NCBI GenBank assembly: GCA_002269645.1
Contig: NIVC01003110.1
Span: 54,930 to 118,929 of the forward strand
Direction: 5' to 3'
Source: Macrostomum lignano
Taxonomy: Eukaryota
DNA length: 64,000 bases
Part shown: positions 141 through 43,304 of the stretch, in pieces
Numbering within the stretch: the stretch's first letter is position 1
Layout: each line of letters starts with the position of its first letter
Made by a program: the position numbers and the translations under genes
The notes under the pieces: model-generated
The model's database searches: none
What the model saw: only the letters and a program-made list of their open reading frames with translations
What the model was told of the DNA's origin: nothing

Positions 141-3100
141 ATGCAGCCATCTTTGAATGGTTGCGAAGCGAACCGGCAACCGCACAGTGCTGGCAGTTAT
201 TACAATAGCAATTTCAACTCGGCTAGCGGCGGCGACGAAGACTGCAACTTTGCCAAACTCTATCGAGCTGTTCGGTGCGGCCGTCTAGTTGCCAGTTGGT
301 CCGAATCTGAGCTGCTGGCCTTGGCGCCGCTGCTATCCTGGCATCGGGACCGGCTAAATCTGGCCGAACTATTGGCAGCCTGCCAACCGGAAGCGAATAG
401 CTTACATTTCGGTCACGTGCTTGACTATGCCAATTCCTTGCATTATAGCGTAGAATTTGATGCCATCGGGCACGACGCTAAGGTGGACCTGGAGCGGCGG
501 GTTGTCGATAAGTGCGGCCTGATTGGCGATTTCGTCTCCGTGGTCTGGCCGTCAGCCGCGTCCAGTGGCGAGTTCGAATCCTGCGACCGGCCGGACCAGC
601 AGGCCAGGATGTTGCTTCGGTGAGGCGATTCGCGTTGTTATTTTACATGCTCATTGATTTTTTGACAATTTTTGTTAGTGTTTTATCCTTCAAAACTATA
701 AAATATTCTTTTTCGAAGTTGTCTTGATTATATTTGAATAATGAACCCTTGCTATCCTTGCCATTGATTATCCTTGCCAATCATCATTGATTATCCTTGC
801 CAATCTCCTTTGATTATCCTTGCCAATCTCCTTTGATTATCCTTGCCAATCATCATTGATTATCCTTGCCATTGATTATCCTTGCCAATCTCCTTTGATT
901 ATCCTTACCAATCATCATTGATTATCCTTACCAATCATCATTGATTATCCTTGCCAATCTCCTTTGATTATCCTTGCCAATCTCCATTGATTATCCTTAC
1001 CAATCATCATTGATTATCCTTGCCAATCTCCTTTGATTATCCTTGCCAATCTCCATTGATTATCCTTGCCAATCATCATTGATTATCCTTGCCAATCTCC
1101 TTTGATTATCCTTGCCAATCTCCTTTGATTATCCTTGTCAATCTCCATTGATTATCCTTGCCAATCATTGATTATCCTTACCAATCATCATTGATTATCC
1201 TTGCCAATCTCCTTTGATTATCCTTGCCAATCTCCATTGATTATCCTTGCCAATCATCATTGATTATCCTTGCCAATCTCCTTTGATTATCCTTGCCAAT
1301 CTCCTTTGATTATCCTTGTCAATCTCCATTGATTATCCTTGCCAATCATTGATTATCCTTACCAATCATCATTGATTATCCTTACCAATCATCATTGATT
1401 ATCCTTTCCAATCTCCATTGATTATCCTTGCCAATCTCCTTTGATTATCCTTGCCAATCATCATTGATTATCCTTGCCAATCTCCTTTGATTATCCTTGC
1501 CAATCTCCTTTGATTATCCTTGTCAATCTCCATTGATTATCCTTGCCAATCATTGATTATCCTTACCAATCATCATTGATTATCCTTGCCAATCTCCTTT
1601 GATTATCCTTGCCAATCTCCTTTGATTATCCTTGCCAATCTCCTTTGATTATCCTTGCCAATCTCCATTGATTATCCTTGCCAATCATTGATTATCCTTG
1701 CCAATCTCCTTTGATTATCCTTGCCAATCTCCTTTGATTATCCTTGCCAATCTCCATTGATTATCCTTGCCAATCATTGATTATCCTTACCAATCATCAT
1801 TGATTATCCTTGCCAATCATTGATTATCCTTACCAATCATCATTGATTATCCTTGCCAATCATCATTGATTATCCTTGCCAATCTCCTTTGATTATCCTT
1901 GCCAATCTCCATTGATTATCCTTGCCAATCATCATTGATTATCCTTGCCAATCTCCTTTGATTATCCTTGCCAATCTCCATTGATTATCCTGACTAATCA
2001 TGCCTAAATCGGCCCTAATTTTATAATTTTCTTAGGAGAATGGGCATACACTAAATGTACTCAGTTTTTCAGTTCAGCTTCCAAATTCAATTCCTTCAAA
2101 AACACTACAGAGACATCCTAGTGGCCGTTCGCACCACGGAAGCTCGCGGCTTCGACGCCTTCAACTCTGCCGTCGCCGTTGCTACGTCGCCAGCCGACGA
2201 CAACAGCTCAGACAGCAATGACAGCCCGGCGGCCACCGAGCTGGCCGACTCCGAGCTGCTGTTCCACCACTGCCTGGCCACCCTAGTCGCTGTCAATCAT
2301 CGCCTGCCGGACCTCCTGCCGCCCCGCCGCCTTCTGCCCGGCCTTCTACGCTTGCGCCGAGGCCGTCGCCTACTTCAACACTTGGCTGCTCTGCAGCCGG
2401 CCGCCTGGCGCAGCCTCGTCCGTCAGCTGCTGGCCTGCGGTCCCGGCCGGCCAATCCGTTGGGCCCTCAGCCTGGCCGAGTTGGATCCCGGCCAGTCCGC
2501 TTGGCTAGCCGAGATGTGCGCCTCAGAGCGGCGCTATCCGGACCTGCTGGCCGGCCTGCTGACCCAGGCTACTCCGCCAGCCGCTAGGCCAGCCGCTCTG
2601 CGTCGCTTATTGATGCACGAGTCACCAGACACGCGGGCCTGGTTTCTAGCGGCCGTCACAGCCGCCGCGTCTGGCGGACGGCAGCAGCAGCAGCAGCAGC
2701 AGCAACAGTCTCCAACATCGCCTGGTCCGGCATTCCTAGCCGCTTGTCGACCAGATCTACTGGCCGAGTTGCGCTCGGTTGCATCGGCTAGTGCTATCGC
2801 CTCCTCGCCTGCGGCTGTCATCCTAGCCAGTCAGCTAGTGAAGCTTTACGCTGTACTGCACTGCCACGCGCCAACTCAACCGGCTTTGACCGAATCGGAG
2901 CTGGCCGCCCTCGCCGAACTGTTGACATCGGCTGGGCCGGATGCAACTGGCGGATTAACGGCTGTGTGCGTAGCCTTTGCTCTGATAGCTTATACAGCGT
3001 TTAACGATACCCAACAGGCCAGACTGTTGGCCTGGCTACGCCGGCTGGTTCGGGAGCCCGGCCGGCCCGACTGTCGGTACAAGGTCTGTTGTAGCTTATT

Positions 3101-6100
3101 GGCTTAAATAATCGAACTGTGCCATTCATTCTTGTTAGTCACGTGACTGCATGAAGTGCATGAAGTTTTCTTACAGAACTATAGGACCATTCAAACAGTA
3201 GGAAGAAAATCAAGCATTTTTCGGCCCGTCGAACTGCCTGAAGAGAAAAGAGGCGATAGAGGAGATTTAAGGAGGGATGAGATGAGAGATGGGATGTGAG
3301 AAGATGGGGGGGAGAGGATAGAGCAGAAATAACAGAGACGAGAGGAGATAAAAGAGGAAGAGGGAAGAAAAAGGAGGAGAGGAAAGAGTGCTCAAAGTAA
3401 CGCAGATGAGGAGGGAAGAAGTGAAAGAGGAAATAATAGGGGGGAGAGAAGAGAAGAGGAGAGAAAAAGGACAGGGAAGAGAGGAAAGAATAGAGATAAG
3501 ACCTGAGATAAGACACAAACCTTGAGCGGGCCCGATTGCTATTGAGATTTTCAAAAGACAAAAAAGCGATTGTTTTTTTTTCTAATTGTTATGTTTAGTA
3601 AAGAAATGCTCCATTGATTTTTTTATTTGTAAAAAAGACAAGAAATAGGATATTGATATACTTTTATAATGCATATTAGCTCAAGCCCAACCCCCCCCCA
3701 AAATGTTTTACTAAGAAACGAGGGGCCAAGAGCCCCAGATGAATGTGTCATTGAAGTTAATCGGCTACCTATTTGTTATAAACCAAACATTTTATCCTTA
3801 TAAACCAAACAGGAGGTGCTGCTCCTCTGCGCCAGCCATCTGCACTCCAGACAGCAGGGCCAGGCCTGCGAATTTCTAGACGGCCTACTGGGCCTTCGTC
3901 AGGCTGCCAAACGAGCCGCACAGCAGCAGCAGCCGCATCTGCCCTCTACTCATCAACAGCTTCAACAGCAGCAGCAGCATCATCTTGTACAGCTGGCGCC
4001 GTCTCTCGTGAAAGTGTTCCTTACTGACCTGCTGCCCGAGCCGGCCGCCGCAGCGCACGCTGTTCGAGTTGAAGTGACGCCCGGCCTGACGTCAACAACT
4101 GAAGGTCATCTGCCTGCGCATTGCGTGCTACAGCTGCTGCAGATGCGTTCGTTTGCTAAGTATAAGGTAAATTTTTGCTCTGTGTTCATGGTATTAAACT
4201 TATAGGCCTTTTAAACTAGGGAATAAAATCTGATGTGTGAGATTTTTAATGGCGACCTTAGTTTGGTGAGATTTCGATTGAGAGTGCTTAGTTTGTTGAG
4301 ATTTCGATTGAGAGTGCTTAGTTTGGTGGGATCTGTATTGAGAGTGCTTATTTTGGTGAGATATCGATTGAGAGCTTAGTTTGGTGAGATATCGATTGAG
4401 TGCTTAGTTTGGTGAGATATCGATTGAGTGCTTAGTTTGGTGAGATATCGATTGAGTGCTTAGTTTGGTGAGATTTTGGAGTGCTTATTTATCGACTTCA
4501 AAGACTTCGCTTCGTTGCATTCCTAGGCTGACGTCACTGGCTGGGTGCTGCGCCAGATCAAAGAGTGCCGCGCTCCGCTCAACACGGTCATGCCAACCCT
4601 AATCGAGGCGTTCGCCAAATCTCTCGTACAACCGCACGACAAATGGAGCGCCCCAGCCTACGAGGTCATCAGGCAGACCGATATTCTAGCATTCTACACG
4701 CCCTCCGCCTGCGGTCCGGCAGCCGCCTGCGCGCCCCTTCGTTGCTTTGATAACGAAGGCGAGAACGAGCTCGAAATGTCTACTATTGAACGAGATTTAA
4801 CCCCGCAACTATTGATGCTGTACTATGTACTGTGCTACGTTGATTGCCTGTTCGATTCTAGGCTAGAAATCTCTCGGTCAGGCCGATCTGTGCATCGCTA
4901 CGATAGCAATCTGCTGTCGCGAATTCCTGTCGGTTATCTGGTCAGGCATTGCCAGCGAAGGCCCGAACACTATAGGGTGCTCTATCCGCTGCTGGTGCGG
5001 CTGCTTGTTCTGCGTATGCCGCATCTGCTGCTAACTGAACTGCCTATTCAGGTAATGCGCTGAGTAATACTGAATATACCCCTAGTCCTTTGGTAGCACC
5101 GTTACCCCTTCCCGTCATTCGGTGACTGCCCCCATCCGGTCATTCGGTGACTGCCCCCATCCGGTCATTCGGTGACTGCCCCCATCCGGTCATTCGGTGA
5201 CTGCCCCCATCCGGTCATTCGGTGACTGCCCCCATCCGGTCATTCGGTGACTGCCCCCATCCGGTCATTCGGTGACTGCCCCCATCCGGTCATTCGGTGA
5301 CTGCCCCCATCCGGTCATTCGGTGACTGCCCCCATCCGGTCATTCGGTGACTGCCCCCATCCGGTCATTCGGTGACTGCCCCCATCCGGTCATTCGGTGA
5401 CTGCCCCCATCCGGTCATTCGGTGACTGCCCCCATCCGGTCATTCGGTGACTGCCCCCATCTTGTCATTCGGTGACTGCCCCCATCTTGTCATTCGGTGA
5501 CTGCCCCCATCCGGTCATTCGGTGACTGCCCCCATCCGGTCATTCGGTGACTGCCCCCATCCGGTCATTCGGTGACTGCCCCCATCCGGTCATTCGGTGA
5601 CTGCCCCCTTTCAGTCATTCGGTGACTGCCCCCTTCCGGTCATTCGGTGACTGACCCCTTTCAGTCATACGGTGACTGCCCCCATCCGGTCATTCGGTGA
5701 CTGCCCCCATCCGGTCATTCGGTGACTGCCCCCATCTTGTCATTCGGTGACTGCCCCCATCCGGTCATTCGGTGACTGCCCCTTCCGGTCATTCGGTACT
5801 ATACTGATATTGGTATTGCAGTCTAAGCACAATATATTGATATAGAATATCTATTCACTGCCCGCAGGACGAGCTGGCCCTGTCTCAGGACAGCTGCCCG
5901 GACGACCTTCGCCCAGTCCAGCTGCTGCCGCCGCCTGGCTCGCCGCCGCCTCGTCCAACAGATTTTGTCGGCTGCAGCGCCGCCGAGCTGGCCTCCGGTG
6001 GACACGCCCTGGCCGGGATTATGACCCGGCTAAACTGGCTAGCCAATCGCAAGGCCGACTGTCTGATACCCTACGCTGATTGGCTGGTCCGGCTGCTTAA

Positions 6101-9100
6101 GGCTTCAACCGGATTGGACGGGCCGGCTAGTCAGCTGGTGCAGGAGCGGCTAAAACCGCTGTGGCTGCGGCTCTACCAGCTGATGCCGCGTCGGCTGGCT
6201 TTGGCTACGCTGTCAGCCCTGCGTGGCGTGTCCCTCAGCGAGGAGACCATCGAGAAAGATCCTGTTGAACAGGTAGGACTGAAAGGTTGCTGAGTCAGTC
6301 ACATGTGTATAAAAATGAATAAATATTCTCAGGTGGATTAGATGAATCCTGGCGCAACCATTTCGGCGACATCGTCATACAACCAGCGCTGAGGCAATTC
6401 TGCCCATTCCGCTGACTCCTGAGCACATGCAAGCGCGCCAATGCTGTACGCAGGCACGCACTCATGACTTTCTAATCGCAAGGCATGTACACTCTCTGTG
6501 CCTTGGGGGTTGGCCATCATGGCTGTGAATCGCACGAACAACCCCAGGCTAATTTTCGTGCACACAGGCCCCAAATGAATGTGGCCGCGCACGGAATCGA
6601 ACCAATGATCAAACGTGTTTACGGCTGAGGTCTCAGCCCCCGATGCGTCATCAGTCATCTAAGGCTTACAGAACGTCAGCTTGATTGGCTTTATTGTCGT
6701 CTATCCCGTTGAAAACTTTAACGTGACCAAAATCGCTAGAGTCATTGCAAATACCTCACTAGTGACTCTTGGGGCAACTCTGCGAATTTTTACGACTCAA
6801 ACACCCGCCTGGCTGTCGTAATCCGGTTTTCATCCGGAGCGACGTCCGGAATTTCATCCGGTACGTAATACAAATGTCCTATTTAAAAACCGGATGAGAG
6901 CCGGATGAAAAGTTTACAAACCGGATGAAAACGTGCATATTTGACCTTTCATCCGGGTGTTCAACCAACATTAGTCCGGAAATTCATCCGGGAAGCTATC
7001 CGGAAAGCCGCGGAGAACAGACATGTATGCACGCCTCCACCAGATGAGAAACCGGACGAAGTTCCGGATGAATGCCGGATCAAATGTATGCACATGTCTA
7101 CCGGATGGTAAAGCAGATGACATGTTAAATAACTAAGTAAGGTTGACAACAAGACGAAATCTTTTGAAAACGTAAGAAAACAAATTGCTGGAAACACCTC
7201 AAAGAAAGCAAGGTATATTGCACTTGCACAGAGGGTGGCCAACCTCTAATTCACTGTGCTGGATAGAGTAGTGGAAGCTGAATATATTGAAACCGAAGAT
7301 AATTGTTAAAGTTGCGTGTCGCTAAAAATGCAAATACACAAGACATGCTTGAGTCAAAAATAGAATGGCAAAACCTCACATTGGGTGGACAAATCAGGAG
7401 AAATGGAGAATCAGACGACACACTGTCTTTTGGGCGGCTACAAATTAGTACCAGGCAGAAAAACTAGAAATTTCACAGAAGAAAAACTTCCAGCTACACG
7501 AAGAAACAGGCGCAGACAAAAACTCACTTATAAAATTGGGGACAACAGAAAAAATAGCGACATATACATTTTTCCATACTGGGAGTGAAACAGAAAGTGT
7601 CAACAGAAAACCAGAAACGCAGACCCGAGGGCGATATTACCTATCTGCAGAACAGTGATTACTGTACACGTTAGTAACGTTAAGTAACGTTACTGTTCTA
7701 AAACACCCACCATGATGTACAGATTGCAGGCGATGGGTACATCGTGCACTTTACATACTGCAGAATTTTTGAGGAATTTTTGTCCTCATGATATGCTACT
7801 GTCTAATCGAGCACATGCTCTTAAGACCCCTAGGCGCTACATATTTGATTCGTGACCAATAGTAAGTTGCAGTCGCAGAAGCAGTAGTGTCATGAGCATA
7901 TTGGCGCCACGCCGCGGCCACTGGCAATGGCACACGGCTCCCTCTTACATCCTATAGTCTGCGACAAAACGACTGGCCCACGACTATATAGCCTACTATC
8001 CCATCAGGGAAAGTAGCATATCTTCCGCATTGTGCACATCGCCGGCCGGACGCTGACTTGTGGGCCCAACCTCTGCGAAGACAGTTCTGGCCAGGTCAAA
8101 GATCGCGCTAGCGGGGGCATTGTCCGAGTCAGCGGCGACTTCTTCCGCCTCACTCGTCGGTCCGATTATGCGCACAATCGTACCCACGTCTTCGTGTCTG
8201 CCTGTCCCCCGTTTAGCCGAGCTGCCTGGCCCTGATTGGGCAGAGCCGCCTCGCCGTGGCTTGGCAGTCTTTGTACCAGGCCGACCGTTTAGTGTGTCAC
8301 GGGTGCGCTTTGGCATCCCCAGTCTTTCCCGTGCAGTTTCACCGCAGCGCGTAAACGCGCGCTGCAGCTCTGCAGAAGTGTACTGCACGGAAGCATTGGC
8401 AAGCCACTGCTTGGCGGCGGCCAGCTTTCCGGGATTTGCCGGCACTGAGATGTAGCCGCAAGCCTTGCGACCTGACAGGCTACTGTTCGCCAGCTCGGTG
8501 TCAGTAAAAAATGGCCCTGAAAAGGGCCCTGATCGTCGCCAGTCGGGCCGATCGGCGCGCTAAAAGAAGCTCAGTCTCGTCGCGCTCATCGAGATCGAGG
8601 CCTTCTATTATCGCCTTTTGCAGGTCGGCTAGACGGCTGTCCAGTTCGGATCGGAGCTGCACCGACGTTTTTAGATACGGTTGCTTGTCGGACAGTGACA
8701 CTGTGCCACCTGACAGCAGACTAGCCGACGATGGACCCGCCTTGTTACAGGTGAGCAGTAACTGGCGAGTCTGGGACGCCGACAGCTCGCAATTAGCATC
8801 AAAGGCGCCACCTCCGGGGTCCGCCAGCGCGTCATCGCCAGCGTCAGAAGCCGTGCTGTCCGACTCCACTGGACCTGGCTGGCAGCCAGAAGCTGGGATC
8901 GCTGCTGCGTCTGCAGAGTGTGGCACCATGCACTGTGAGGCCCGAACGATTAGCGCGTTAGCAGTCTTTACATTCCGTTCCAGGTTGGTGAACTTCGAAC
9001 GTTCCTGATCCAATTGTCGCAAGAGCTTTGCTTCCATCTTCTGTGCCACGACTGCCTTCTGCTGCAGAACTTTTATCTCTTCTCGCAATCGGGCTTCAGT

Positions 9101-12100
9101 GACGCGGGCTGCCCGAACCTCGGAACCTGAAATATTGGTTTATTCAATACCCTAGACTACCAATGACCGGATGTACGTACCAGTATATTTATACAAACAA
9201 AACATATGTATGTATGTACGTATGTATGCTAACATGTACACATGCACTACGGCAGAACCTCAGTATACTCACCTTGTGCATTAGTGAGTGTCTTGGCCCT
9301 TTGCAACTCGAGAAGGAGTCCTTTGCAGGACACGCAAGCTCGGGGCAGCTCCGTCGGCTGAGCGTGGACGTTAGTCAAGCTTGCGGCTCCAGAGGCTTCG
9401 GCTTTATTAGAAAATGGTCCCCGTACTAGCCTTTAGTCTTCGCTGTGACAATGCAGACGCGACAGCCTACTTGTACGGGAATAGCCGATTCCCGCGCAAC
9501 GGCAACAATAAGCGGTGCTGCCGTGGATCCATCAGTGCCGACAACTTGGGTCTTGTCAAGATAGTCGTCATATTGAAAAAGGAAGTACCGCTGCGTCCTC
9601 TCTGCTTTGTACGGCACCATATCAGGCGACGGATTGCAACCTGCAGCTGTTGCGCCAGCCTGCAGAGCAGTAGTCGCAGCATCCGGCGGTTGGGTGTCAC
9701 CTGCAGTCGTCACCTCAGCCTGCAGTGCAGTAGCTGTAGCACCTGGCGGTTGGGTGTCACCTGCAGTCGTCACCTGCAGTCGTCACCTCAGCCTGCAGTG
9801 CAGTAGCTGTAGCATCTGGCGGTTGGGTGTCACCTGCAGTCGTCACCTCAGCCTGCAGTGCAGTAGCTGTAGCATCTGGCGGTTGGGTGTCACCTGTAGC
9901 CGTCAAGCCAGCCTGCAGAACAGTAGCCGCAGAATCTGGCGGTTGGGTCTCCCTTGCAGCCGTCCCTTTCTTGCAAGCCACCAAAGAGACCTTGGCCGCC
10001 ACCTTTTTTACACTTGGGCGGTGTCGTTTGACCGGCATGTCGGCTTTCTGTTTTGCTGCGGTGCGTTTACGTGCGGTGGCTTCATGCATAGTCGCTCTGG
10101 AAAGACGTTTAGATAACCAGAGTTGCTTTGGGGCAGAACAGCATCAGAAATTTCTTAATGAGGTGACGTTAATCTTTTCATTAATGAGGTTAATGAGGTG
10201 ACGTTTAGTTAGTGTACTAAACTTTTTACACAGACGAGATAGGAGTTAAGAGCATTCTTAAAACTGAAAGGTTTTGTACTACAACCCCATAGACCACAAG
10301 CGTTAAAGATCGTAGGACGCAATGTTATGAAAGAAAGTAATGAAACAAATGTCTGGAAACATCTTAGAGAACAAAATTGACACACGTTGCATTGCACATG
10401 CACAGAGGGCCAACCTCTAATGTATTTTGCATAAAAGTTCGATAAAGTTTCGATATAAGTTCTGCAGCAGAAGGCAGTCGTGGCACAAAAGATGGAAGCA
10501 GAGCTCTTGCGACAATTAGATCGGGAACATTCGAAGTTCACCATTACTTCATTACTTCATAACTTCACGAAACATACTTCTTTAGTTTTAAAATAGAAAA
10601 GCCTGTCCCCGCTTAGCAGTCCATTGTAACTACAGATCTCACGGCTTCTTCTGGGGGGGCCTCTTTCGGTAAGACGGATATGTCGCGCAGAGGGCGCCGT
10701 CGACGCTTGCCGACCTTCATGTGCTCCAGGGGAGCAGGCGGCGGGCTTGGTGGCATGTCGATGGCAAAGAAGTTCGGGGCCTGCAGGATTGTACGATGCC
10801 GGTGACGACCATGACTCTGCAACCGCCTGTCCCGTTCTTCTGGGGCAGAGCCCCATACCAATCCGCACAGTCTGGACAGCACTGGGCAGGTAGGCGTCTT
10901 CTTTCGTCTCGGCGGCGCGACACATAAGATGGGGGGGCCTCGTCAGGCAGTCTGTTATAGTCTTCTAGGGTGTACCGACCTGCGCCGGGCTGTTGAAGGC
11001 TTGCGCTAGAGCTAGGCAGACATGGCGACGATGGCAGGACGGAGTAGCCAGGACCTTCTTTGTATGCAGCTTGCGTGCTGCATGCGACAGGGGACGACGG
11101 ACCCAGCAATGACGGTGACATAACGTCGCCGTCGGGTGAGACCTCAGGAGTCCACTTTGGCGGCGGCGACCCAGCCACCGTGGTCTCGTCGCCACTGGAG
11201 CGGTCATCGAGGTCACCAAGCACGGAATCTGGAATGACAGTATCGAGCAGCTTTGACCAGTCGATGACGGCCTGCTCGCTCGCTCGCTTGGGTTTGCTCG
11301 ACATCCGCTGCAGTTGGGTTAATGAGCAATAATTTTTTAATTGACATAAATGTACCAGTGCCTATTATACTCGTATGTCTCTATAATACCTTAATAATTC
11401 GTTTTGCTAGTGCCTATGGTAGACTGTTGGTTCTATAATTATTGAGTTAGTTATTTCAAGGAGAGAGAGTAATAGTGCTCAGAAACTTACTAAGAGAAGG
11501 GAGTGGGATAATATACAAAGAGGATTCAGAGAGAGTTGTACCGTGACCCTCTAATCTTGGCGAACGCCCGATTAAGACTGCAAACTAATACATGTACCAG
11601 TACTAAGACCGCTCAGGCCAATACATAAGACGCTACCAGAACGCTACCAGAAACGCTACCAGAAACGCTACCCAGAAAGTATTTGAATGAAATTCTAGGA
11701 AATATGTAAAATTATCAGACAGAGGCAAAAGATCTGTTACAACTTTGGTGGCAGCTTAAGGATAGTTAAAAGGACAGGACCATAACGCCTGTTACAGCTC
11801 GTATCAGCGGTGGTATCCTCTTTCTCACCCGTACGGACGTAATTAAATAAAAATAGTTACTAAAAAATATGGACACAAAACAGTTGCAGTTCAGATTCGC
11901 GATTGCCCAGACGGAGCAAGCAAGACAGTATACTTCTATACAAGTGCAGTTTAGCAGATGAACCAGCATACGAGCGTGATATAGCGAGGCCCGCACTAAA
12001 ATCAGTGACGCGAAATGTACGCATATAGAGGATGTACGCAAAATTAAATTGCATGGGACGCAGCATGACTAAAAATATTTGTTAAGAAAAGCCAAACTGC

Positions 12101-15100
12101 GCATAAGGAAGCAAAGTAATCTTTGTGTTTGACACAACGCAGGCGCCGACGATGTCCTCCGGTGCAGCCTGCCTGACTTCACCAAGGTACTCTTCGACTC
12201 GATCGATTTCGACGTCCTGCACACGCAGCTCACGCAGCGTCAGTACAACACCTGTGGCAGTCGCACTGATGGTCTCCACGCGCTGGAACCTAAAAGACGT
12301 TGCCTCGACTCCACGAGTGGCAACAAGGCAGGAGACTTTCGGATGCTCATCGCCTATAGGCTGTCGAAATACTTCAATAAACAACCCACTTGGAAGCGAC
12401 GCCGTGCGCCATCCGTCCGCCGTACCCATGGGTCGTCGCAGCTTAACGCCGAAGTGAATAATGCACTGCATTCTGAGTCACGTGCTGCTGCGGCTCCAAG
12501 TCATCGCTCTTCAGTCGGCTCTCAGCTTCTATGAGAGCAAATTCACGCTCAATGGCATGTACAATTTCAACGTCCGTACGCCGCGAACCGTGAAGACGCT
12601 GCCGTAAGTGGACGTGCATCGTCTCAAAAAGCCCTGCCGATTGCGTGTGCAGTGGGCCTGCGAGATACGCGTATGACACCATATGGGCACAAACATGGTG
12701 GGCGTTATACGTGAGTGCGCGAAGAGAATATAGACGAGCCAAATTGGCGTGGAAGTGCCTCAGCGAAACTTCGACGTGACACAGTTCACTCTTTGGCGCA
12801 CCTTCAAGCGTCAACCAGAACACTGCGGACGAAAGCACGAGCAAATGCCAATAGTGAGCCTCTGGCAGAAAATCTTCTAGTAGCATTGGGAAGTAAGCAA
12901 TTATCCACAATGCCAGTTCAAGTCCCCGTAGGTGCCTGATGTCCTTCAGCAGTCGGATGGAATGTCGCTGGACGGACCTGGGAACTCGAATGTAGCGCAT
13001 GCGCTGTGATATGTCACCAATCCGTTTGTGCAGGTCGGGGCAATTCTCCGCGAACCGGTCAGGTTTCTCGTGGCGCACGAGGAAAAGCTGAAACAGTAGC
13101 CAGCGCACTAATCCCAAGCAAAGCTGGTGGAGAAAGCAAGGAGGCGTCGCTCTGACAAAGTCGAAGCCAAACAGATCACCAAGCGGAGATTGTCCACGTA
13201 CACCCAGAGTGTCATCTCCGTTGCCACGTAACGTCCGGTGTTCCGCAAGGTGTTCCGCAATCGCTGTCATTCAGCGATCGAACTACTGTCTGGACACATC
13301 CGAGGCGGCGTGCGTTCATTTGCATGGCGTCTGTCAACTCCACATCATACACTCTGCCGTGGCCTGACGGATGAACTGACGTCCGTAGGTAGCACTTGTC
13401 GCATCCGTATACGGCGGAAAAGCGCTTAAAGCACAAAGCGTCTGCCCTGGCAGGTGCGTTAAACATGGCGAACAATACATGTACCCGAAGACGCTGCCGA
13501 ACGCCATGTCGGTCCACATACTGTATACCATTCAGACGCAGATCGTTAAGTCCGTCAACTATAATAGGTAGACATGCCTTGGGATGCACCTTTGTAGTTC
13601 CTGCCCAGACTCCGAGCTTCATTACGAATTGCAACTTGTACCGGTCGTGAACTTCAACGAAGCACAAATAAAAGGGGCACACCTCAACAGTACTTGTCCT
13701 GCAAAGCCGGAACCCATCCGAGAATAAGATGCCGGAGACGTCGCTGCGACTCTCCACATCGATGCCATCGACGAATTCTTTGTACAGTTCGCTGCTACGC
13801 ACGTGGAGCACCTCGGGATCTATGACAGGGAACACAACGTGGTCGAGCATTCCACGCCACATCACAAGCGCTTTCAGCTGCATAGGACCATCAAAGTGCT
13901 AGAAATTTGCGACGCTGCGTCCTCCGCAGTGGACGCACGTTGCGGTGCTTGGATCACTCCGTCCGGGAGAGTTCTTGTAACACTCGTTGCAGACTGTGGA
14001 GCACAGCGTCGTTCCAGAGAATGACTGAGCAGTCTTTATCGCATCCCGCGCAGCACGTCCAGTTTTGGGCAGCCTGTTGTTGGGCACAAGGCGGTGCAAC
14101 ATCTCTAGAAGTCTTGTAAACTTCTCACGGGACAGTTTGAGATCCTCCGCACAGGAATTGACCTCAAAAAGAGCCTCGCCTAGTGTGTGCGGAAATCCCG
14201 GGTGCCAGTCTTCCAGCAGCCTGGCGTTGATACGACGTGGTTCCTCGCCATCATCGCCTGTGTGGGATATGCGGTGGAAAAAGATTACTGTATACTCAGT
14301 AAGACTAATTAGAGCAAGACTCACACAGTGCCCGGTGTGTGAATGTGTGGAGCAGCGTATGCAGGCAATCTGTATTCTGTATTGTGTCACGGACAGTAAT
14401 GCGTCAAAGGAATATTACCGTCTTCGTTATCGTCCTCTTCGTCATCCGATGTATGGGACCCAGCGGACGTGTCTGCTCCCGATGGCGAGTCTGATGTATG
14501 GGACCCAGCGGACGTGTCTGCACCCGATGGCGGTTCCTCGCCATCATCGCCTGTGTGGGATCGCCCGTCTTCGTTATCGTCCTCTTCGTCATCCGATGAG
14601 ACGCTCGCAGAGTTGTCCAGTGGCTCACCTGTGCGGGATGAGCGGTGCAAAAAATTTGTACTGTATAACCAGCCACATCATCTCAACGTCACATCGCCTC
14701 ATAAAGACAAGTGTCTCACTTTCAGAAATGTCTGCAGGTTTTCCGTCAGTGTTGCAGTTGCCAGAGCTGGTAGCACCTGAGCTGGTAGCACATGAGCTGG
14801 TAGCACATGAGCTGGTAGCACCCGGACCATTGTGCGCGGCTTCAGCTGATGCCCTTTCCGAAGAACGTGATCGGCTTACGCCAGCAGAACCACGCCCGCG
14901 TCTGGTAGACAGCCTGCGTTGGCGCATGTAGTTGTCGCATCCAGTCGCGACGGCGAGTGCTACGATCATCGCCATCCATATCCATGCGCTGTAATGAGGT
15001 TTGCTTCTTCACATTATCAGTAGTACGAAAAAAAATTCTAGACGGATTTTTAGCATGAACCTACGCATGCATTTAAATCTGAAATATATTCAGCATGTCT

Positions 15101-18100
15101 TTGTTCCTTCAACTGATAATATAATATACTCCCTTACTTCTTTTTCATTATTGTGTCTTTGATCTGATTGCTGGACTGACAAGAAAGATACGCTACAGAC
15201 AACTAAACATAATTAGTTATGGAATCACAAAGCATGAGCCATAAACTTTGGAAAATTCCCAAAATTCTCAGGCCATAGGCAACATAGACAACAGTGTATT
15301 TAAAATTGAAATTGGGATAACATATGGCACGAAATTACTACGGCTTTTGCCACAAAATGTATGGCTTTTATACCGTCTTTGGCGATACAGCTCTATAATT
15401 CAATACTTACGAGTACTTCACTATTTACGTCACTCACAGTGTGACCAGGAACAAAAATGTGAAAAATAACACAGCTAGAAAGAAAAAACACAGCTGCTAC
15501 TTAAATGAAGAAAAAGTGAAAAACATTCACTATAGCAATTTTTCCAATGCTTACTTATTGTCCGAATAGCAATTCTCGTTTTAATTCATTCCAGCTAAGT
15601 CAAGCAGCGCATTTTCATCTTAAATCGACATCATCATCAATCATACGTTGTAGGGATGGATTGAAACGGTATTACCCTATTTGTCTGGGCTAGTGGCCTT
15701 CCTTGCTACTGCCAGTTGCTTTCCACCCAGGTAGAAAATATAAAAACACAAGAAAAAGCTAAATTGGGCTGTTTATTTAAGTTTAACACAGAAAAGGGAT
15801 GACTTCTTAAAAAGACTCTACAGCACCAGAGTCATTTCAGAGTCGCAGACAATAAACCGCCTCAGATTGACTCTACAGCGCCAGAGTCATTTCAGAGTCG
15901 CAGACAATAAACCGCCTCAGATTGACTCTACAGCGCCAGAGTCATTTCAGAGTCGCAGACAATAAACCGCCTCAGATTGACTCTACAGCGCCAGAGTCAT
16001 TTCAGAGTCGCAGACAATAAACCGCCTCAGATTGACTCTACAGCGCCAGAGTCATTTCAGAGTCGCAGACAATAAACCGCCTCAGATTGACTCTACAGCA
16101 CCAGAGTCATTTCAGAGTCGCAGACAATAAACCGCCTCAGATTGACTCTACAGCACCAGAGTCATTTCAGAGTTGCAGACAATAAACCGCCTCAGATACG
16201 TCTCTACAGCACCAGAGTCATTTCAGAGTCGCAGACAATAAACCGCCTCAGATTGACTCTACAGCGCCAGAGTCATTTCAGAGTCGCAGACAATAAACCG
16301 CCTCAGATTGACTCTACAGCACCAGAGTCATTTCAGAGTCGCAGACAATAAACCGCCTCAGATTGACTCTACAGCACCAGAGTCATTTCAGAGTCGCAGA
16401 CAATAAACCGCCTCAGATACGACTCTACAGCACCAGAGTCATTTCAGAGTCGCAGACAATAAACCGCCTCAGATTGACTCTACAGCACCAGAGTCATTTC
16501 AGAGTCGCAGACAATAAACCGCCTCAGATTGACTCTACAGCACCAGAGTCATTTCAGAGTCGCAGACAATAAACCGCCTCAGATTGACTCTACAGCACCA
16601 GAGTCATTTCAGAGTCGCAGACAATAAACCGCCTCAGAATGACTCTACAGCACCAGAGTCATTTCAGAGTCGCAGACAATAAACCGCCTCAGATTGACTC
16701 TACAGCACCAGAGTCATTTCAGAGTCGCAGACAATAAACCGCCTCAGATTGACTCTACAGCACCAGAGTCATTTCAGAGTCGCAGACAATAAACCGCCTC
16801 AGATTGACTCTACAGCACCAGAGTCATTTCAGAGTCGCAGACAATAAACCGCCTCAGAATGACTCTACAGCACCAGAGTCATTTCAGAGTCGCAGACAAT
16901 AAACCGCCTCAGATTGACTCTACAGCACCAGAGTCATTTCAGAGTCGCAGACAATAAACCGCCTCAGATTGACTCTACAGCACCAGAGTCATTTCAGAGT
17001 CGCAGACAATAAACCGCCTCAGAATGACTCTACAGCACCAGAGTCATTTCAGAGTCGCAGACAATAAACCGCCTCAGATTGACTCTACAGCACCAGAGTC
17101 ATTTCAGAGTCGCAGACAATAAACCGCCTCAGATACGACTCTACAGCGCCAGAGTCGCAGACAATAAACCGCCTCAGATACGACTCTACAGCGCCAGAGT
17201 CGCAGACAATAAACCGCCTCAGATACGACTCTACAGCGCCAGAGTCGTTTCAGAGTCGCAGACAATAAACCGCCTCAGATTGACTCTTAAGCGACTCTTT
17301 GCCGACTTTTTGGCGGCTTTTACCGTGACATCTCGTCGTTTTAGAATCGTCTAGAGTCTTTTTTTTCCTATTTTACCTGTGTTACATGCACCGACTCTGG
17401 GGCTACGCAAGTGACTTTGAGACGCCTCTGGCCCGCAGGTTGTCGCCGCACTCCCAGACTGCGCCTATCGCCAGCCGGCCCTGCTAGAGCTCTGCCTTAG
17501 AATCATTGAACTATCACTGCGCGCCTCCGAGTCCTACTGGGAGCGGCAGATTGCTCTGGCCTGTCTAGATGGCCGGCATCAGGTGGAGCAGCTTCACCAG
17601 CAGCAGATGCTTCAACAACAGCAGCTGCAGCAGCAGCAGCACCCAGACAAAGGCTCGCCTTGTCAGCCGCTCCGTCGGAGCCTGCTAGCTACTCAGGCCG
17701 CTTGCACAGTTCAGCTACTGCTGGAGCGATGCCTGGACTCGCCCAGGCACGTTCGTCGTATTCTGGCCACCTTTGTTCATTCGTTGTTCATATCGGATCG
17801 GGAGCGAGCCCTGTGCCAGGTGGTTCACTGGCAGTGCTATCCGCTCCGGCTGGTTCCATTCACCGCCTGCGCCATACCATCCATGCATATTTGCCTGGAT
17901 TTCATACTGGACCATTTGGCTTTTAATGCCGATCCGGCTGCTAGGATTTTCAATATCAATCTAATGGGATTTCTGGCTGGCCAGTACAGAATTCAGGCTG
18001 CGCTGGATAAGGCGGCTACCGTACTAGAGAGCCTTACTGTGCTATCTAATCAGGTAAATACAGATGAATTGCTTCATAATCTGGCCACCCAAACCAGCTA

Positions 18101-20764: not shown

Positions 20765-20878
20765 CTCATATTAGGTGATGCAGAAGTTCATGTTAGCTGA
20801 TAAAGAAGCTCATGCATATACCAGCATCCTATCCGAGCGCAAAAGTCGCAGCCCAGACCGCACCGACCCCAACTCTTC

Positions 20879-26249: not shown

Positions 26250-32525
<6,276 letters not shown>

Positions 32526-40349: not shown

Positions 40350-41225
40350 CGTCCCTGTACAGTCCGATCAAGGACGACTAAAGTAACGTACTCAAGTAGT
40401 CCTTGAGTCCGATTTGTATAAGAACTGTGATGTCTGTACAATCCGATTCGTATAGCTCGTAGGACTTTTGATTGTAGCAGATGTACAATGGCGGCATAAA
40501 TAGCCACAAGTTTCTGGTGTCTATAGATTGTATAGCCTGCGGCTGTACAAGAAGTATGAATGCTTATTGGAAAATTGCTGAGTAATACGGGGGTTGTAAA
40601 GGATGTACATGCACGACTTTGAGTGCAGTATAACAGTTACAGTAACTGATGGAGCAGTGCTCTCTAAACTCTCCAAAATACGACAAGTGTGCTGGGAGCA
40701 TGATTGATAATTACATAAAGATTGTACCAGAAACCGAATGTAAAAGTATATACTCTCGCCAACCACAAATATTAATCTGACAGGCCGAAACATACGCGGA
40801 TATCTACTGCGACGAGTGAGCGAGTCCGGTTTGAATTCGAATATTCCAATATAAATTTTATGAATTATATTTACCTTATATTTATCTCTGTATTTGCTCT
40901 CGAGCGGTGTATAGTGAACCTTTTTGAATTCGATTAAATTGGCGAAATTTACTGTTCAAAGCCACGTACAAAAATGTTTATCCAAGTCTGCGGCTTCGAA
41001 CTCGCTGTATCTTGCTATTAAAGACATACTCGTAGTTCTAAGTTTATCAAGCTTCATCGCACAGATGAATTCATATCGATGGCTCAGCTCAATATAAGGC
41101 CCGATCAACAATTTGACGATCTAAAATTGTGGGCCGAACACCTTATATTAAGAAACTTTTGTATCCAAGATATTATTAACATCTGTATTCTTCTCCCCTA
41201 TTGACTTTCAGTTGGAAGGGATTAA

Positions 41226-41644
41226 TGCCCAGTCTCAGTTGAGAGGATTAGTGCCCAGTCTCAGTTGAGAGGATTAGTGCCCAGTCTCAGTTGAGAGGAT
41301 TAGTGCCCAGTCTCAGTTGAGAGGATTAGTGCCCAGTCTCAGTTGAGAGGATTAGTGCCCAGTCTCAGTTGAGAGGATTAGTGCCCAGTCTCAGTTGAGA
41401 GGATTAGTGCCCAGTCTCAGTTGAGAGGATTAGTGCCCAGTCTCAGTTGAGAGGATTAGTGCCCAGTCTCAGTTGAGAGGATTAGTGCCGAGGATTAGTG
41501 CCGAGACTGTTGAAAGGATTAGTGCCCAGTCTCAGTTGAAAGGATTAGTGCCGAGGATTAGTGCCGAGTCTCAGTTGAGAGGATTAGTGCCCAGTCTCAG
41601 TTGAGAGGATTAGTGCCCAGTCTCAGTTAAGAGGATTAGTGCCC
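41226..41644. repeat. 26-bp minisatellite (GAGAGGATTAGTGCCCAGTCTCAGTT), left part, split by the Polinton
   Basis: The array resumes in register at 56979. Confidence 0.95.
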
Positions 41645-42054: not shown

Positions 42055-42123
42055 GATCCCAAGGACTTTAAATCATCAGCGCAGGGTCCTTACCCTTTGA
42101 AAAAATCTAAATTTTCTCTAAAA

Positions 42124-43282: not shown

Positions 43283-43304
43283 TTTTTTATTGAAAAAAAA
43301 TTGT

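What the first reader, a model, noticed from the sequence alone, without database searches (positions are those of the whole stretch)
10613..11304. CACTA-type transposon carrying a CtIP/Sae2 end-resection domain
Seen: an intronless, co-oriented ORF sits between the EnSpm transposase and the BEN accessory gene. With one base restored in a G run it reads R-R-D-E-R-R-R-L..CCPDC..YGALPPEERDRRLQSHGRHRHR..APNFF..MPPS..KRRRRP, matching by eye the CxxC, RHR and FW region of CtIP/Ctp1/Sae2. Established: this domain binds DNA and stimulates MRN (Mre11) nuclease at blocked DNA ends and hairpins, and CACTA excision leaves breaks that the host must repair. Also seen: the position of the CDK site (human T847-P) reads A-P here, and the N-terminal tetramerisation helix is absent. 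Inference: the transposon captured a repair-pathway module, either to help process excision ends or as a decoy that steers repair choice. I do not know of a described transposon-borne CtIP domain.
Basis: partly seen in the sequence, partly recalled or inferred. Interest (0 to 1): 0.9.

Follow-up and report, generated by a model that had tools for sequence, protein, structure and literature searches.

The report
Transposon family carrying CtIP repair domain
A family of cut-and-paste DNA transposons, in what is almost certainly the flatworm Macrostomum lignano, carries as a conserved second gene a copy of the C-terminal domain of the host's DNA-break resection factor CtIP/Sae2, so a mobile element appears to have taken over part of the host's break-repair control.

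Summary
On the minus strand at 11304..10613 lies an intronless ORF. It reads as a CtIP/Sae2 C-terminal domain once a C4 run is read as C5, as it is in three intact sister copies.

A profile of 12 such domains from this genome finds 383 proteins among 1.84 billion. Every listed match lies at or near the C-terminal end of the protein, and checked top hits carry both CtIP_N and SAE2 at E about 1e-12.

The ORF is a fixed part of a roughly 9.8 kb element with 34-bp terminal inverted repeats (TIRs). The order is transposase, CtIP-like ORF2, ORF3, ORF4. About 42 loci carry ORF2. At least 30 have the transposase just upstream on the same strand, even where transposases are only 38% identical. Synonymous sites are saturated and dN/dS is 0.10-0.24.

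The host's own three-exon CtIP lies elsewhere, and TE plus host domains form one clade (100/99).

Corrections: the element is CACTA-related (CMC clade) but not canonical, with CCC termini and 2-bp target-site duplications (TSDs). The missing Thr-Pro CDK site is also missing in the host gene. The window copy is dead. "BEN" for ORF4 is only weakly supported.

Helper versus decoy remains untested. I found no published precedent.

The parts
6804..6837 (-). 3' terminal inverted repeat (TIR) of the element. It reads CCCGCCTGGCTGTCGTAATCCGGTTTTCATCCGG on the + strand. It is the only TIR in the window.
   Evidence: The same 34 bp sits at both ends of the C138 copy. The 23-bp core of this TIR (CCCGCCTGGCTGTCGTAATCCGG) occurs 35 times in the genome, mostly as inverted pairs.
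6838..7110 (-). 3' subterminal region dense in CCGGATGAA / TTCATCCGG motifs. These are candidate binding sites for an element-encoded protein.
   Evidence: (inverted pairs I2, I4-I6). The same motif is found at the 5' end of complete copies and in the marine relative L056.
7996..9139 (-). ORF4: N-terminal coiled coil plus a C-terminal helical, possibly BEN-like, domain. It is split by a frameshift here and is an intact 380 aa ORF in C137 and C138.
   Evidence: No Pfam hit, not even BEN at E<=10. An AlphaFold2 model has a helical core with pLDDT 64-85. The best Foldseek hit is the BEN-solo protein Bsg25A (TM 0.54, E 4.5); NACC1 and BANP BEN domains are also listed.
8986..9077 (.). One arm of a 92-nt inverted repeat, lying inside the 5' coding part of ORF4.
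   Evidence: I1, 93% complementary. The same pair is present in the C138 and C1022 copies.
9426..10143 (-). ORF3: low-complexity 20-aa repeats, a small predicted beta-rich domain, then CxxC and a helix. It is broken into two frames here and is 303-323 aa in intact copies. Function unknown.
   Evidence: The AlphaFold2 model is of low to moderate confidence and has no meaningful structural match. No Pfam hit.
10452..10543 (.). Second arm of the inverted repeat, just downstream of the ORF2 stop codon.
10613..11304 (-). ORF2, the finding: an intronless CtIP/Sae2-like gene, frameshifted in this copy.
   Evidence: Intact copies of 221-267 codons.
10688..10980 (-). The conserved Sae2/CtIP C-terminal domain within ORF2, from 'GRYTLEDYNRLP' to 'KRRRRPL'. 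It contains CxxC, RHR, NFF and (S/T)P.
   Evidence: Alignments A3 and A4. Profile search. Conservation table.
10842..10845 (-). Homopolymer that is C4 here and C5 in intact copies. It causes the frameshift. It is either a real 1-bp deletion or an assembly error.
12082..14414 (-). Transposase (CMC/EnSpm-related DDE), broken into four ORF pieces here. It is roughly 800-950 aa in intact relatives.
   Evidence: It aligns at 23% identity over 600 aa, E 4e-23 in the database search, with P0002, which carries Pfam Transposase_21/Tnp2. Motifs SDG, FDAPA, GCDKC, HVCAH and LFETM are visible in the sequence.
14415..15813 (-). 5' untranslated and subterminal part of the element, 98.3% identical to C138. 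Homology stops at about 15813. Roughly 475 bp, including the 5' TIR, are missing.
15814..17287 (.). 55-bp satellite, 27 copies, abutting the truncated 5' end. It is not part of the complete elements.

Best explanation
What it is (shown). ORF2 is the second gene of a CMC-clade (CACTA/EnSpm-related) cut-and-paste DNA transposon family. That family captured the C-terminal 'Sae2-like' domain of its host's CtIP gene. It has kept the domain under purifying selection while the family split into many subfamilies. The window holds a dead copy of a young subfamily: it is 5'-truncated, lies antisense in an intron of INTS2, and all four genes are broken.

How it works (inferred).
- The domain keeps the residues that define the CtIP/Ctp1/Sae2 C-terminus: the R..R..L stretch, CxxC, RHR, NF[FW] and P.(S/T). 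I therefore expect it to make the same contacts as the host domain, with Rad50/Mre11 (MRN) and DNA.
- In yeast this domain alone is the minimal unit that stimulates the Mre11 endonuclease.
- The transposase belongs to the clade that includes Transib/RAG1, whose members leave hairpin-capped donor ends. Processing of such hairpin-capped, or protein-blocked, ends involves MRN-CtIP/Sae2.
- My preferred reading is that ORF2 is brought to the element's own breaks, perhaps through its TE-specific N-terminal 'DWS..LD' motif. There it promotes MRN processing and resection. The donor break is then opened and repaired by homologous recombination from the sister chromatid, which also restores the element.

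The direction of the effect, activation or competitive blocking, is not shown.
For: Homology.
- The profile of 12 TE domains finds 383 hits at E<=1e-3 in 1.84e9 proteins, each listed match at or near the C-terminal end.
- P0007, P0008, P0012 and P0013 carry CtIP_N plus SAE2.
- Pfam SAE2 is above cut-off for 7 of 19 paralogues, best 8.3e-7.
- 15 of the 24 positions that are at least 80% conserved in 60 canonical CtIPs are kept in the TE copies.

Part of the transposon.
- TIR pairs plus 2-bp TSDs flank Tpase-ORF2-ORF3-ORF4 in C138 and C1022.
- 35 hits to the 23-bp core of the TIR, including four full-length pairs and about ten 1.3-2.8 kb derivatives.
- At 29 loci the transposase sits about 1-8 kb upstream of ORF2 on the same strand (mostly 1-4 kb; 6-8 kb in C4280, C251 and C1267). 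C10 adds one more by inspection. Transposase identity goes down to 38%.

Selection. pS is 0.60-0.93 and above 0.69, essentially saturated, in every pair but one; dN is 0.12-0.63; dN/dS is 0.10-0.24 where it can be computed. The N-terminal half diverges freely while the domain is conserved.

Capture.
- The host CtIP has three exons, an N-terminal coiled coil and a neighbouring acetyl-CoA synthetase gene.
- TE plus host form a clade at 100/99; TE monophyly has support 74/69.
- The marine relative L056 lacks the gene.

Mechanistic background.
- PMC6167383: Sae2 residues 170-345, a monomer, is the minimal unit stimulating MRX. It is 3-fold weaker than full length and binds Rad50 when phosphorylated.
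- PMC3299998: no revertants in the Ac/Ds hairpin excision assay in yeast without Mre11 and Sae2.
- PMC12730594: EnSpm, Mirage, Chapaev and Transib/RAG1 share the C(2)C and H(3-4)H motifs.
Against: - No expression, protein or activity data exist.
- No N-terminal tetramerisation domain is detectable. Pfam CtIP_N finds nothing, and BLAST to host exon 1 gives E 0.48. In yeast, oligomerisation is needed for full function in vivo, which fits a competitor as well as a helper.
- The canonical CDK site (human T847-P, 93-97% conserved) is absent. It is equally absent in the host gene, so how the domain is switched on in this animal is unknown.
- Hairpin formation by this transposase is inferred from distant relatives only.
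- The host's position inside the TE+host clade is unresolved. A single capture, and even its direction, rest on parsimony.
- The assembly contains duplicated chromosome sequence, so copy counts are inflated.
Confidence: 0.5

Rival explanations
1. Decoy or antagonist. The TE protein occupies the CtIP-binding surface of Rad50/MRN, or DNA ends, without activating the nuclease. This would protect the excised element's ends, or push donor-site repair towards end joining. It would be analogous to phage and adenovirus proteins that neutralise MRN/SbcCD or RecBCD.
For: - It has only the C-terminal domain, with no detectable tetramerisation domain.
- In yeast the monomeric C-terminal fragment is weaker in vitro, and oligomerisation-defective forms fail in vivo.
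- There is no Thr-Pro CDK site, and S267A-type proteins are inactive in yeast.
Against: - The host CtIP has the same 'QAPNFF' without Thr-Pro, so this is not a TE-specific inactivation.
- Every residue class kept in canonical CtIPs is also kept in the TE copies, so nothing marks the domain as crippled.
- Six of 19 TE variants have Asp-Pro at or next to the CDK position. That would mimic the active state rather than the inactive one.
Confidence: 0.27
2. DNA-binding and end-bridging accessory protein. The RHR/CxxC region is used for its DNA-binding and bridging activity, to pair or hold the transposon ends. This would be the role TNPA plays in maize En/Spm, and it would not involve MRN.
For: - RHR and CxxC are invariant in the TE copies.
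- The RHR motif is described as DNA-binding in Ctp1/CtIP (from my own knowledge; see also the title and abstract of PMC11317151).
- The element has dense subterminal repeats that need a binding protein.
Against: - ORF3 and ORF4 (the latter possibly BEN-like, a DNA-binding fold) are the more obvious candidates for binding the subterminal repeats. They are present in the marine relative that lacks ORF2, so end recognition does not need ORF2.
- Conservation also extends to parts of the domain outside RHR/CxxC, namely NF[FW], MP.(S/T)P and KRRRRPL.
Confidence: 0.13
3. Passenger. A transduplicated host gene fragment that hitch-hikes in the element without any function, as in many Pack-MULE or CACTA gene captures.
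For: Captures of host fragments by DNA transposons are common. The window copy and 13 further loci carry stops or frameshifts.
Against: - dN/dS is 0.10-0.24 with synonymous sites saturated.
- The gene is kept at the same position in subfamilies whose transposases are only 38-60% identical.
- Most copies are open across the domain.
- Conservation is domain-specific while the N-terminal half diverges.
Confidence: 0.04

Closest known systems
CtIP / Ctp1 / Sae2 / Com1 C-terminal domain (Pfam SAE2, PF08573)
   Same: The domain is homologous over about 100 residues:
- the basic R..R..L stretch
- CxxC
- W/Y-Y/F
- RHR
- NF[FW]
- P.(S/T), at the position of human T859
- the terminal basic (K/R)RRR-P-(L/Y) motif
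The profile search retrieves true CtIPs at E about 1e-12.
   Different: - It is encoded inside a transposon and is intronless, 220-410 aa.
- No CtIP_N or tetramerisation domain is detectable.
- It has a TE-specific N-terminal 'MD..DWS..LD' motif.
- There is no Thr-Pro at the CDK position, but that is shared with this host's own CtIP.
EnSpm/CACTA and the wider CMC (CACTA-Mirage-Chapaev) / CMCT clade of DNA transposons
   Same: - The DDE transposase aligns over 600 aa with a Transposase_21 (Tnp2) protein.
[quoted passage not shown]
- It has TIRs, dense subterminal repeats, several genes on one strand, and short deletion derivatives.
   Different: - Termini are 5'-CCCGCC..GGCGGG-3', not CACT(A/G)..(C/T)AGTG.
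- The TSD is 2 bp in both copies where it could be read, not 3 bp.
- There is no direct Pfam hit to Transposase_21.
- From memory, a 2-bp TSD is what Repbase gives for Mirage. I did not test this.
DNA transposons that carry captured host enzymes or repair proteins
   Same: A host-derived gene is kept as a stable extra ORF of a DNA transposon lineage, presumably because it helps the element. Examples:
- fungal KDZ, Plavaka, EnSpm, hAT and Helitron elements with TET/JBP dioxygenase (PMC12730594)
- Helitrons with RPA-like proteins (from memory)
- CACTA/MULE elements with ULP1 protease (from memory)
   Different: The captured module here is a regulator of MRN-dependent end resection. I found no report of that in a transposon.
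Mobile-element proteins that manipulate end processing
   Same: A mobile element encodes its own factor acting on the host's DNA-end machinery. Examples, all from memory: phage Mu Gam (Ku-like), lambda Gam, adenovirus E4/E1B against MRN.
   Different: Those are inhibitors or end-binders unrelated to CtIP, and they come from viruses. Here a eukaryotic transposon carries a homologue of the activator itself.

Membership tests
CtIP/Sae2 C-terminal domain (PF08573) | Match to the Pfam SAE2 profile above the gathering score (19.8 bits) | tested here: met
   Met for the family: 27.4-28.8 bits for the C10 paralogue, and 7 of 19 members hit, best E 8.3e-7. The window's own subfamily is just below the cut-off: 17.7 bits for the joined window protein and 14.2 bits for the intact C138 copy.
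CtIP/Sae2 C-terminal domain (PF08573) | A reverse search with the family profile retrieves recognised CtIP proteins | tested here: met
   383 hits at E<=1e-3, each listed match at or near the C-terminal end. Hits with CtIP_N plus SAE2 come at E 1.6e-12 to 7.6e-12.
CtIP/Sae2 C-terminal domain (PF08573) | CxxC and RHR motifs and the NFW box | tested here: met
   C56 and C59 are kept in 18-19 of 19 TE variants, R-H-R in 18-19 of 19, and F102 in 19 of 19. W103 is F in 15, W in 2 and L in 2.
CtIP/Sae2 C-terminal domain (PF08573) | CDK site (human T847-P, yeast S267-P) | tested here: not met
   The TE copies read Q-A (13 of 19) or x-D (6 of 19). The host CtIP also reads Q-A. The canonical set has T in 93% and P in 97%.
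Full-length CtIP/Ctp1/Sae2 protein | N-terminal coiled coil or tetramerisation domain | tested here: not met
   No PF10482 hit over the cut-off anywhere in the genome. ORF2 versus host exon 1 gives E 0.48 over 13 aa. Older subfamilies have a short CxxC plus heptad-like stretch of unknown meaning.
Full-length CtIP/Ctp1/Sae2 protein | Binds Rad50/MRN and stimulates the Mre11 endonuclease | not testable with these tools
   Needs biochemistry.
EnSpm/CACTA (CMC clade) transposon | [quoted passage not shown] | tested here: met
   Indirect. E 4e-23 at 23% identity over 91% of the query to P0002, which scores 51 bits on PF02992. GCDKC and HVCAH lie between FDAPA and LFETM in the sequence. The criterion comes from PMC12730594. 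There is no direct Pfam hit.
EnSpm/CACTA (CMC clade) transposon | Termini 5'-CACT(A/G), or at least CA..TG | tested here: not met
   Termini are CCCGCCTGG..CCAGGCGGG in all 25 exact-match termini. The marine relative has CCCGCTG...
EnSpm/CACTA (CMC clade) transposon | 3-bp target-site duplication | tested here: not met
   2 bp in both copies where both flanks could be read: TG in C138 and GA in C1022. A range of 2-5 bp is within the wider CMCT clade.
EnSpm/CACTA (CMC clade) transposon | Subterminal repeats and non-autonomous deletion derivatives sharing the TIRs | tested here: met
   CCGGATGAA motifs at both ends. About ten TIR pairs lie only 1.3-2.8 kb apart.
   No Pfam hit at E<=10. The AlphaFold2 core is helical with pLDDT 64-85. 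The best Foldseek hit is the BEN-solo protein Bsg25A (TM 0.54, rmsd 3.3 over 82 columns, 23% identity). NACC1 and BANP BEN domains are also listed, but all E values are above 4.

The most novel reading that the evidence does not exclude
This would be the first eukaryotic transposon known to encode its own regulator of MRN-dependent end processing. On this reading:
- The TE protein docks on Rad50/Mre11 at the hairpin- or transposase-capped breaks made by its Transib/RAG1-related transposase.
- It sets the repair outcome, through opening and resection, so that homologous repair restores the element at the donor site.
- It does this free of cell-cycle control, because it has no CDK site and older subfamilies carry Asp-Pro there.

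If so, repair-pathway choice would be a trait under selection in the transposon itself.
Probability: 0.35. Interest if true: 0.85.

Novelty: new variant of a known kind. Interest (0 to 1): 0.72.

Why it matters
Cut-and-paste transposons depend on host repair of the breaks they make. The choice between end joining and homologous repair decides whether the element is lost from, or restored at, the donor site. Until now that choice has been treated as the host's.

A transposon lineage that has kept a CtIP/Sae2 domain under selection through deep diversification suggests the element intervenes at the very step that commits a break to resection. Three things follow.
- It offers a natural, minimal, oligomerisation-free and apparently CDK-independent version of the Sae2-like domain, in dozens of diverged variants. 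That is useful for dissecting how this poorly structured domain talks to Rad50/Mre11.
- It adds a repair regulator to the short list of host modules stably recruited by DNA transposons.
- The likely host, Macrostomum lignano, has transgenesis and RNAi, so the question can be tested in vivo.

Tried and rejected
- Word-indexed search of 5.8 billion proteins with the whole intact ORF found nothing. The domain is too short and diverged for that index. The exhaustive profile search was needed.
- PDB sequence searches with the protein and with the family profile found nothing relevant. I found no solved structure of this domain to compare folds with, so I ran no further search on ORF2.
- Pfam on the two window fragments separately gave no hit.
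- A CtIP_N (PF10482) search of the genome to find the host gene gave only noise. The host gene was found instead through P0003 and the loci C3324, C176 and C2929.
- I suspected C277 and C725 of being the host gene. They turned out to be further TE-type copies with ORF3 downstream.
- I tested the idea that the ORF2 N-terminus derives from the host's N-terminal coiled coil, which would mean a full-length retro-copy was captured. BLAST gives E 0.48 over 13 residues ('LT[DE]ENR.L'). The idea is not supported and is kept only as a lead.
- ORF3 fold: a low-confidence beta-rich model with no meaningful match.
- A search for a 5' TIR in the window found none. That copy is truncated.
- Reading TSDs in more copies was not possible.
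- Scripts could not read most genome loci, because no files were provided for them. I went through alignment files instead.
- The sigma-70 promoter and terminator scan is irrelevant for a eukaryote, and I ignored it.
Full report
**1. The observation**

On the minus strand an ORF starts with ATG at 11304. It reads 'MSSKPKRASEQAVIDWSKLL...RRRDERRRLPAQCCPDCADWYGALP' and then runs out of frame. The next frame (10942..10613) continues 'PEERDRRLQSHGRHRHRTILQAPNFFAIDMPPSPPPAPLEHMKVGKRRRRPL...'.

The switch is at the G run 10842-10845. The coding strand has CCCC here. They are C138, C1022 and C137, 96-98% identical in protein and about 98% in DNA. The 'restored base' is what intact copies actually have. 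Whether the window's C4 is a real deletion or an assembly error in a homopolymer cannot be decided without reads.

**2. It is a CtIP/Sae2 C-terminal domain**

- The two fragments give nothing in Pfam on their own.
- Joined, they give SAE2 (PF08573) at 17.7 bits, just under the 19.8 cut-off.
- A six-frame search of the whole genome with PF08573 found 12 places, all in long open frames, best 28.8 bits.
- A search with the joined protein found 53 matches.
- Diverged paralogues pass the Pfam threshold. The C10 copy scores 27.4 bits at E 7.4e-6, and 7 of 19 members hit, best 8.3e-7.

I aligned 12 diverged domains (A4) and searched the profile exhaustively against 1.84 billion representative proteins. 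There were 383 hits at E<=1e-3. Every listed match lies at or near the C-terminal end of the protein. Of the top hits I checked, P0007, P0008, P0012 and P0013 carry both CtIP_N and SAE2 at E 1.6e-12 to 7.6e-12.

A column-by-column comparison with 60 canonical CtIP domains shows that 15 of the 24 positions at least 80% conserved there are kept in the TE copies. These include the R..R..L stretch, both cysteines of CxxC, R-H-R, the F of NFW, and the P.(S/T) that aligns with human T859. The terminal 'KRRRRPL' corresponds to the '(K/R)RRRP(L/Y)' that ends many animal CtIPs.

**3. It belongs to a transposon, and which one**

The three close copies have the same gene order on one strand:
- transposase, 629+201 aa in C138
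- the CtIP-like ORF2, 221-267 codons
- ORF3, 303-323 aa with 20-aa repeats
- ORF4, 380 aa, a coiled coil plus a helical C-terminal domain

Aligning the ends gives the element's limits. In C138 the element runs for about 9.8 kb between perfect 34-bp inverted repeats, CCCGCCTGGCTGTCGTAATCCGGTTTTCATCCGG. It sits inside an ATGGGATATTTGGAC microsatellite that continues on both sides, with TG duplicated. In C1022 the duplicated dinucleotide is GA. Both ends are dense in CCGGATGAA motifs.

The 23-bp core of the TIR occurs 35 times in the genome, against 2 for the reversed control. There are four full-length pairs (9.7-14.5 kb) and about ten pairs only 1.3-2.8 kb apart, which are deletion derivatives that keep the ends.

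The transposase has no direct Pfam hit. It does align over 600 residues (23% identity, E 4e-23) with P0002, a protein that scores 51 bits on Transposase_21/Tnp2. Its sequence shows SDG, FDAPA, GCDKC (a C(2)C), HVCAH (an H(3)H) and LFETM in the order described for the EnSpm-Mirage-Chapaev-Transib clade (PMC12730594).

So 'EnSpm' is right at clade level. The element is not a canonical CACTA, because its termini are CCC..GGG and its TSD is 2 bp in both copies I could read.

**4. The window copy is dead**

- The window has only the 3' TIR, at 6804-6837.
- Homology to C138 (98.3%) stops at about 15813, where a 55-bp satellite begins. About 475 bp with the 5' TIR are missing.
- The transposase is in four pieces. 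ORF2 is frameshifted. ORF3 and ORF4 are broken.
- The copy lies antisense in an intron of Integrator subunit 2. Exons at 2055-3107 and 17421-18113 match INTS2 profile positions 128-411 and 817-1009.

**5. The gene is an old, selected part of the family, not a passenger**

*Copy number.* The 53 matches collapse to about 47 loci. Three are the host gene (section 6) and two match only the N-terminal part. That leaves about 42 TE-borne domains. Most are open across the match, and 14, counting the window, carry stops or frameshifts.

*Linkage.* Comparing coordinates with the transposase search gives 29 loci where the transposase lies about 1-8 kb upstream of ORF2 on the same strand (mostly 1-4 kb; 6-8 kb in C4280, C251 and C1267). 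C10 adds one more by inspection. That search listed 72 matches, because only 70 of 588 candidates were scored. The linkage holds in subfamilies whose transposase is only 38-62% identical to the window's type, for example C255, C1111, C2225, C312 and C1411.

*Selection.* Between ten subfamily representatives, synonymous differences are 0.60-0.93 and essentially saturated (pS above 0.69) in every pair but one, while dN is 0.12-0.63. Where dS can be computed, dN/dS is 0.10-0.24. Conservation is confined to the roughly 100-residue domain and a short N-terminal motif ('DWS..LD'). The acidic middle part diverges and expands freely.

*Caveat.* The assembly is known to contain duplicated chromosome sequence. 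Identical pairs on different contigs should therefore not be counted as separate insertions.

**6. Where the gene came from**

*The host gene.* The best hit of the profile search, P0003 (395 aa, E 7.5e-46), is a gene model. Its C-terminal domain is identical, and its N-terminal part nearly identical, to the product of locus C3324, which has near-identical copies on C176 and C2929. That locus looks like an ordinary host gene.
- Exon 1 has a coiled-coil-like N-terminus.
- An intron is filled with a minisatellite.
- Exon 2 follows, and exon 3 carries the domain (SAE2 at 21.9 bits).
- An acetyl-CoA synthetase gene lies upstream, and no transposase is nearby.
- A canonical short CtIP from a metagenome, P0004 (coiled coil plus SAE2, with 'RTPPHFW'), finds nothing else in this genome.

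I therefore take C3324 as the host's CtIP.

*The tree.* On 118 columns, all TE domains plus the host domain form one clade (100/99), with P0004 as sister (99/87). TE monophyly has support 74/69. The host's place within the clade is unresolved. TE ORF2 is 55-60% identical to the host's last exon over the domain only.

*A relative without the gene.* A related element on a 10.2 kb marine metagenome contig has a transposase 50% identical, and is complete with TIRs starting CCCGCTG. It has ORF3- and ORF4-like genes but no trace of the domain, even with all HMMER filters off.

The simplest reading is that ORF2 was captured from the host lineage's CtIP after the three-gene element already existed. 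That was long enough ago for synonymous sites to saturate.

**7.

- *The CDK site.* The Thr-Pro that is T847-P in human and S267-P in yeast is conserved in 93-97% of canonical CtIPs. It is absent from all TE copies. It is equally absent from the host gene, which reads the same 'VQAPNFF'. Its absence therefore says something about this animal's CtIP regulation, not about a TE-specific decoy.
- *Asp-Pro variants.* Six of the 19 TE variants, the older C10, C312, C1566 and C255 types, have Asp-Pro there. In C312 it is in exact register with Thr-Pro counted from the FW anchor; in the others it is one residue off. An acidic residue at that site is partly active in yeast (S267E). This is a lead only.
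- *A shifted CDK-type site.* All copies and the host have (S/T)-Pro at the position of human T859, where canonical proteins have T-Q.
- *N-terminal helix.* 'No N-terminal helix' holds for detectable homology. However, the older subfamilies begin 'MDHWSHAA(S/T)C.IC.AL..EN..LR.E..RL', a CxxC followed by a heptad-like stretch.
- *ORF4 as 'BEN'.* There is no Pfam hit even at E<=10. An AlphaFold2 model of the conserved C-terminal part has a four-helix core at pLDDT 64-85. Its best Foldseek hit is the BEN-solo protein Bsg25A (TM 0.54, 23% identity), with NACC1 and BANP BEN domains also listed, but no E value is below 4. This is plausible but not shown.
- *ORF3.* It has no recognisable fold.

**8. 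How it probably works**

*Shown.* A homologue of the domain through which CtIP/Sae2 acts on MRN is a selected gene of the element.

*From the literature.*
[quoted passage not shown] It is about three-fold weaker than the tetramer. It depends on phosphorylation at S267 and binds Rad50 (PMC6167383).
- In the Ac/Ds excision assay in yeast, where the transposase leaves hairpin-capped donor ends, no revertants are recovered without Mre11 and Sae2 (PMC3299998, citing Yu et al. 2004).
- EnSpm-type transposases share catalytic-core motifs with Transib and RAG1 (PMC12730594). From memory, both of those make hairpins on the flanking DNA.

*Inference.* The element's breaks are of the kind that MRN-CtIP handles, and ORF2 engages MRN there. 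I favour a helper role. ORF2 would stimulate or recruit MRN to open and resect the donor ends. That keeps the host cell alive and favours homologous repair from the sister chromatid, which puts the element back and so gives a net gain of copies. The TE-specific N-terminal motif could tether ORF2 to the transposase complex.

*The main rival.* A competitive blocker of the same interface fits the lack of an oligomerisation domain about as well. I give 0.5 to the helper reading and 0.27 to the decoy. A DNA-bridging role independent of MRN gets 0.13, and a functionless passenger 0.04. That the thing is a selected TE-borne CtIP domain I hold at above 0.9.

**9. The organism**

The genome has 764,410,778 bases in 5,269 contigs. 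The Mlig_3_7 assembly of Macrostomum lignano is described as 764 Mb in 5,270 scaffolds, with duplicated chromosome sequence (PMC8629364). I did not confirm this with a marker gene, so it is a strong inference only.

**10. Novelty**

Full-text searches that combined CtIP/Sae2/RBBP8/Com1 with transposon, transposase, CACTA, EnSpm or Macrostomum returned only papers on host repair. None describes a transposon-encoded CtIP domain.

DNA transposons that keep captured host genes are known. TET/JBP dioxygenase in several fungal superfamilies is one example. From memory, RPA in Helitrons and ULP1 in CACTA/MULEs are others. This is therefore a new variant of a known kind, with an unusually telling cargo.

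Noticed in passing
window 40500-54650: A Polinton/Maverick-like virus-like element. It has an rve integrase (53042-54082, minus), a poxvirus-A32-type packaging ATPase (45806-46579, plus), an adenovirus-type cysteine protease (48064-48561, minus), and long ORFs that look like a protein-primed DNA polymerase (48980-51341, minus; no Pfam hit) and capsid proteins (42425-43964, minus). An ORF with a parvovirus-type phospholipase A2 domain lies at 54064-54609 (PF08398, E 1e-12).
   Followed up: partly
window 2055-6293 and 17421-19010 (+ strand): The transposon lies antisense in an intron of Integrator complex subunit 2. The exon at 2055-3107 matches INTS2 profile positions 128-411, and the exon at 17421-18113 matches positions 817-1009.
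   Followed up: partly
G000 C3324:~48550-51380 (L054 2554-5384); also C176 and C2929: The host's own CtIP gene has three exons. Its domain lacks the otherwise 93-97% conserved Thr-Pro CDK site (it reads RHRDNQRPPVQAPNFF). It has (S/T)-Pro where other animals have the T-Q ATM/ATR site. This suggests CtIP is regulated differently in this lineage.
   Followed up: partly
window 8986-9077 and 10452-10543; L045 5398-5488 / 6874-6964; L043 5260-5349 / 6791-6880: A roughly 91-nt inverted repeat (88-93% complementary) brackets ORF3 in all three copies examined. One arm is part of the ORF4 coding sequence. The other is an inverted copy of it, just after the ORF2 stop. Its purpose is unknown. It could form a long hairpin in a read-through transcript, or mark an old inversion.
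   Followed up: partly
window 15814-17287: A 55-bp satellite (27 copies, 96% matches) starts exactly where the element's homology to complete copies ends, replacing its 5' terminus. The window is very rich in minisatellites elsewhere too, for example at 18075-18340, 21900-23000, 28300-29200, 30250-32300 and 35550-36900.
   Followed up: no
L044 5698-6861 (C137) and L043 3222-4384 (C1022): A Mos1/mariner-type transposon is nested at the same place, between the transposase and ORF2, in two copies. Its transposase ORF is an intact 387 aa in C137 and split into two frames in C1022 (HTH_48, DDE_3, Transposase_1). The nested insertion was therefore copied along with the host element, or else the two loci are assembly duplicates. 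A separate Tc1/mariner-like remnant lies in the window at 58117-59458.
   Followed up: no
L056 (ENA ERZ976238, Tara Oceans marine metagenome contig, 10198 bp): A complete relative of the element, about 9.9 kb, with TIRs starting CCCGCTGAAAAAATCG and the same TCATCCGG subterminal motif. It has a transposase 50% identical plus ORF3- and ORF4-like genes, but no CtIP-like gene.
   Followed up: yes
L002 (C312), L008 (C1566), L053 (C725), L052 (C277): Older ORF2 subfamilies begin 'MDHWSHAA(S/T)C.IC.AL..EN..LR.E..RL' and carry tandem acidic repeats (DDEEGSETQGPD...) before the domain. They have Asp-Pro at or next to the CDK position. In these subfamilies the ORF3-like gene runs on into the coiled coil that belongs to ORF4 in the window's subfamily.
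   Followed up: partly
window 10650-10662: A second homopolymer (a G run on the + strand) near the 3' end of ORF2 differs in length between copies. It gives each copy a different C-terminal tail after the conserved 'RRRRPLRDISV'.
   Followed up: no
window 20804-25559 (+ strand): A PRP6-like pre-mRNA splicing factor gene (HAT/TPR repeats) in three long exons, separated by minisatellite-filled introns.
   Followed up: no
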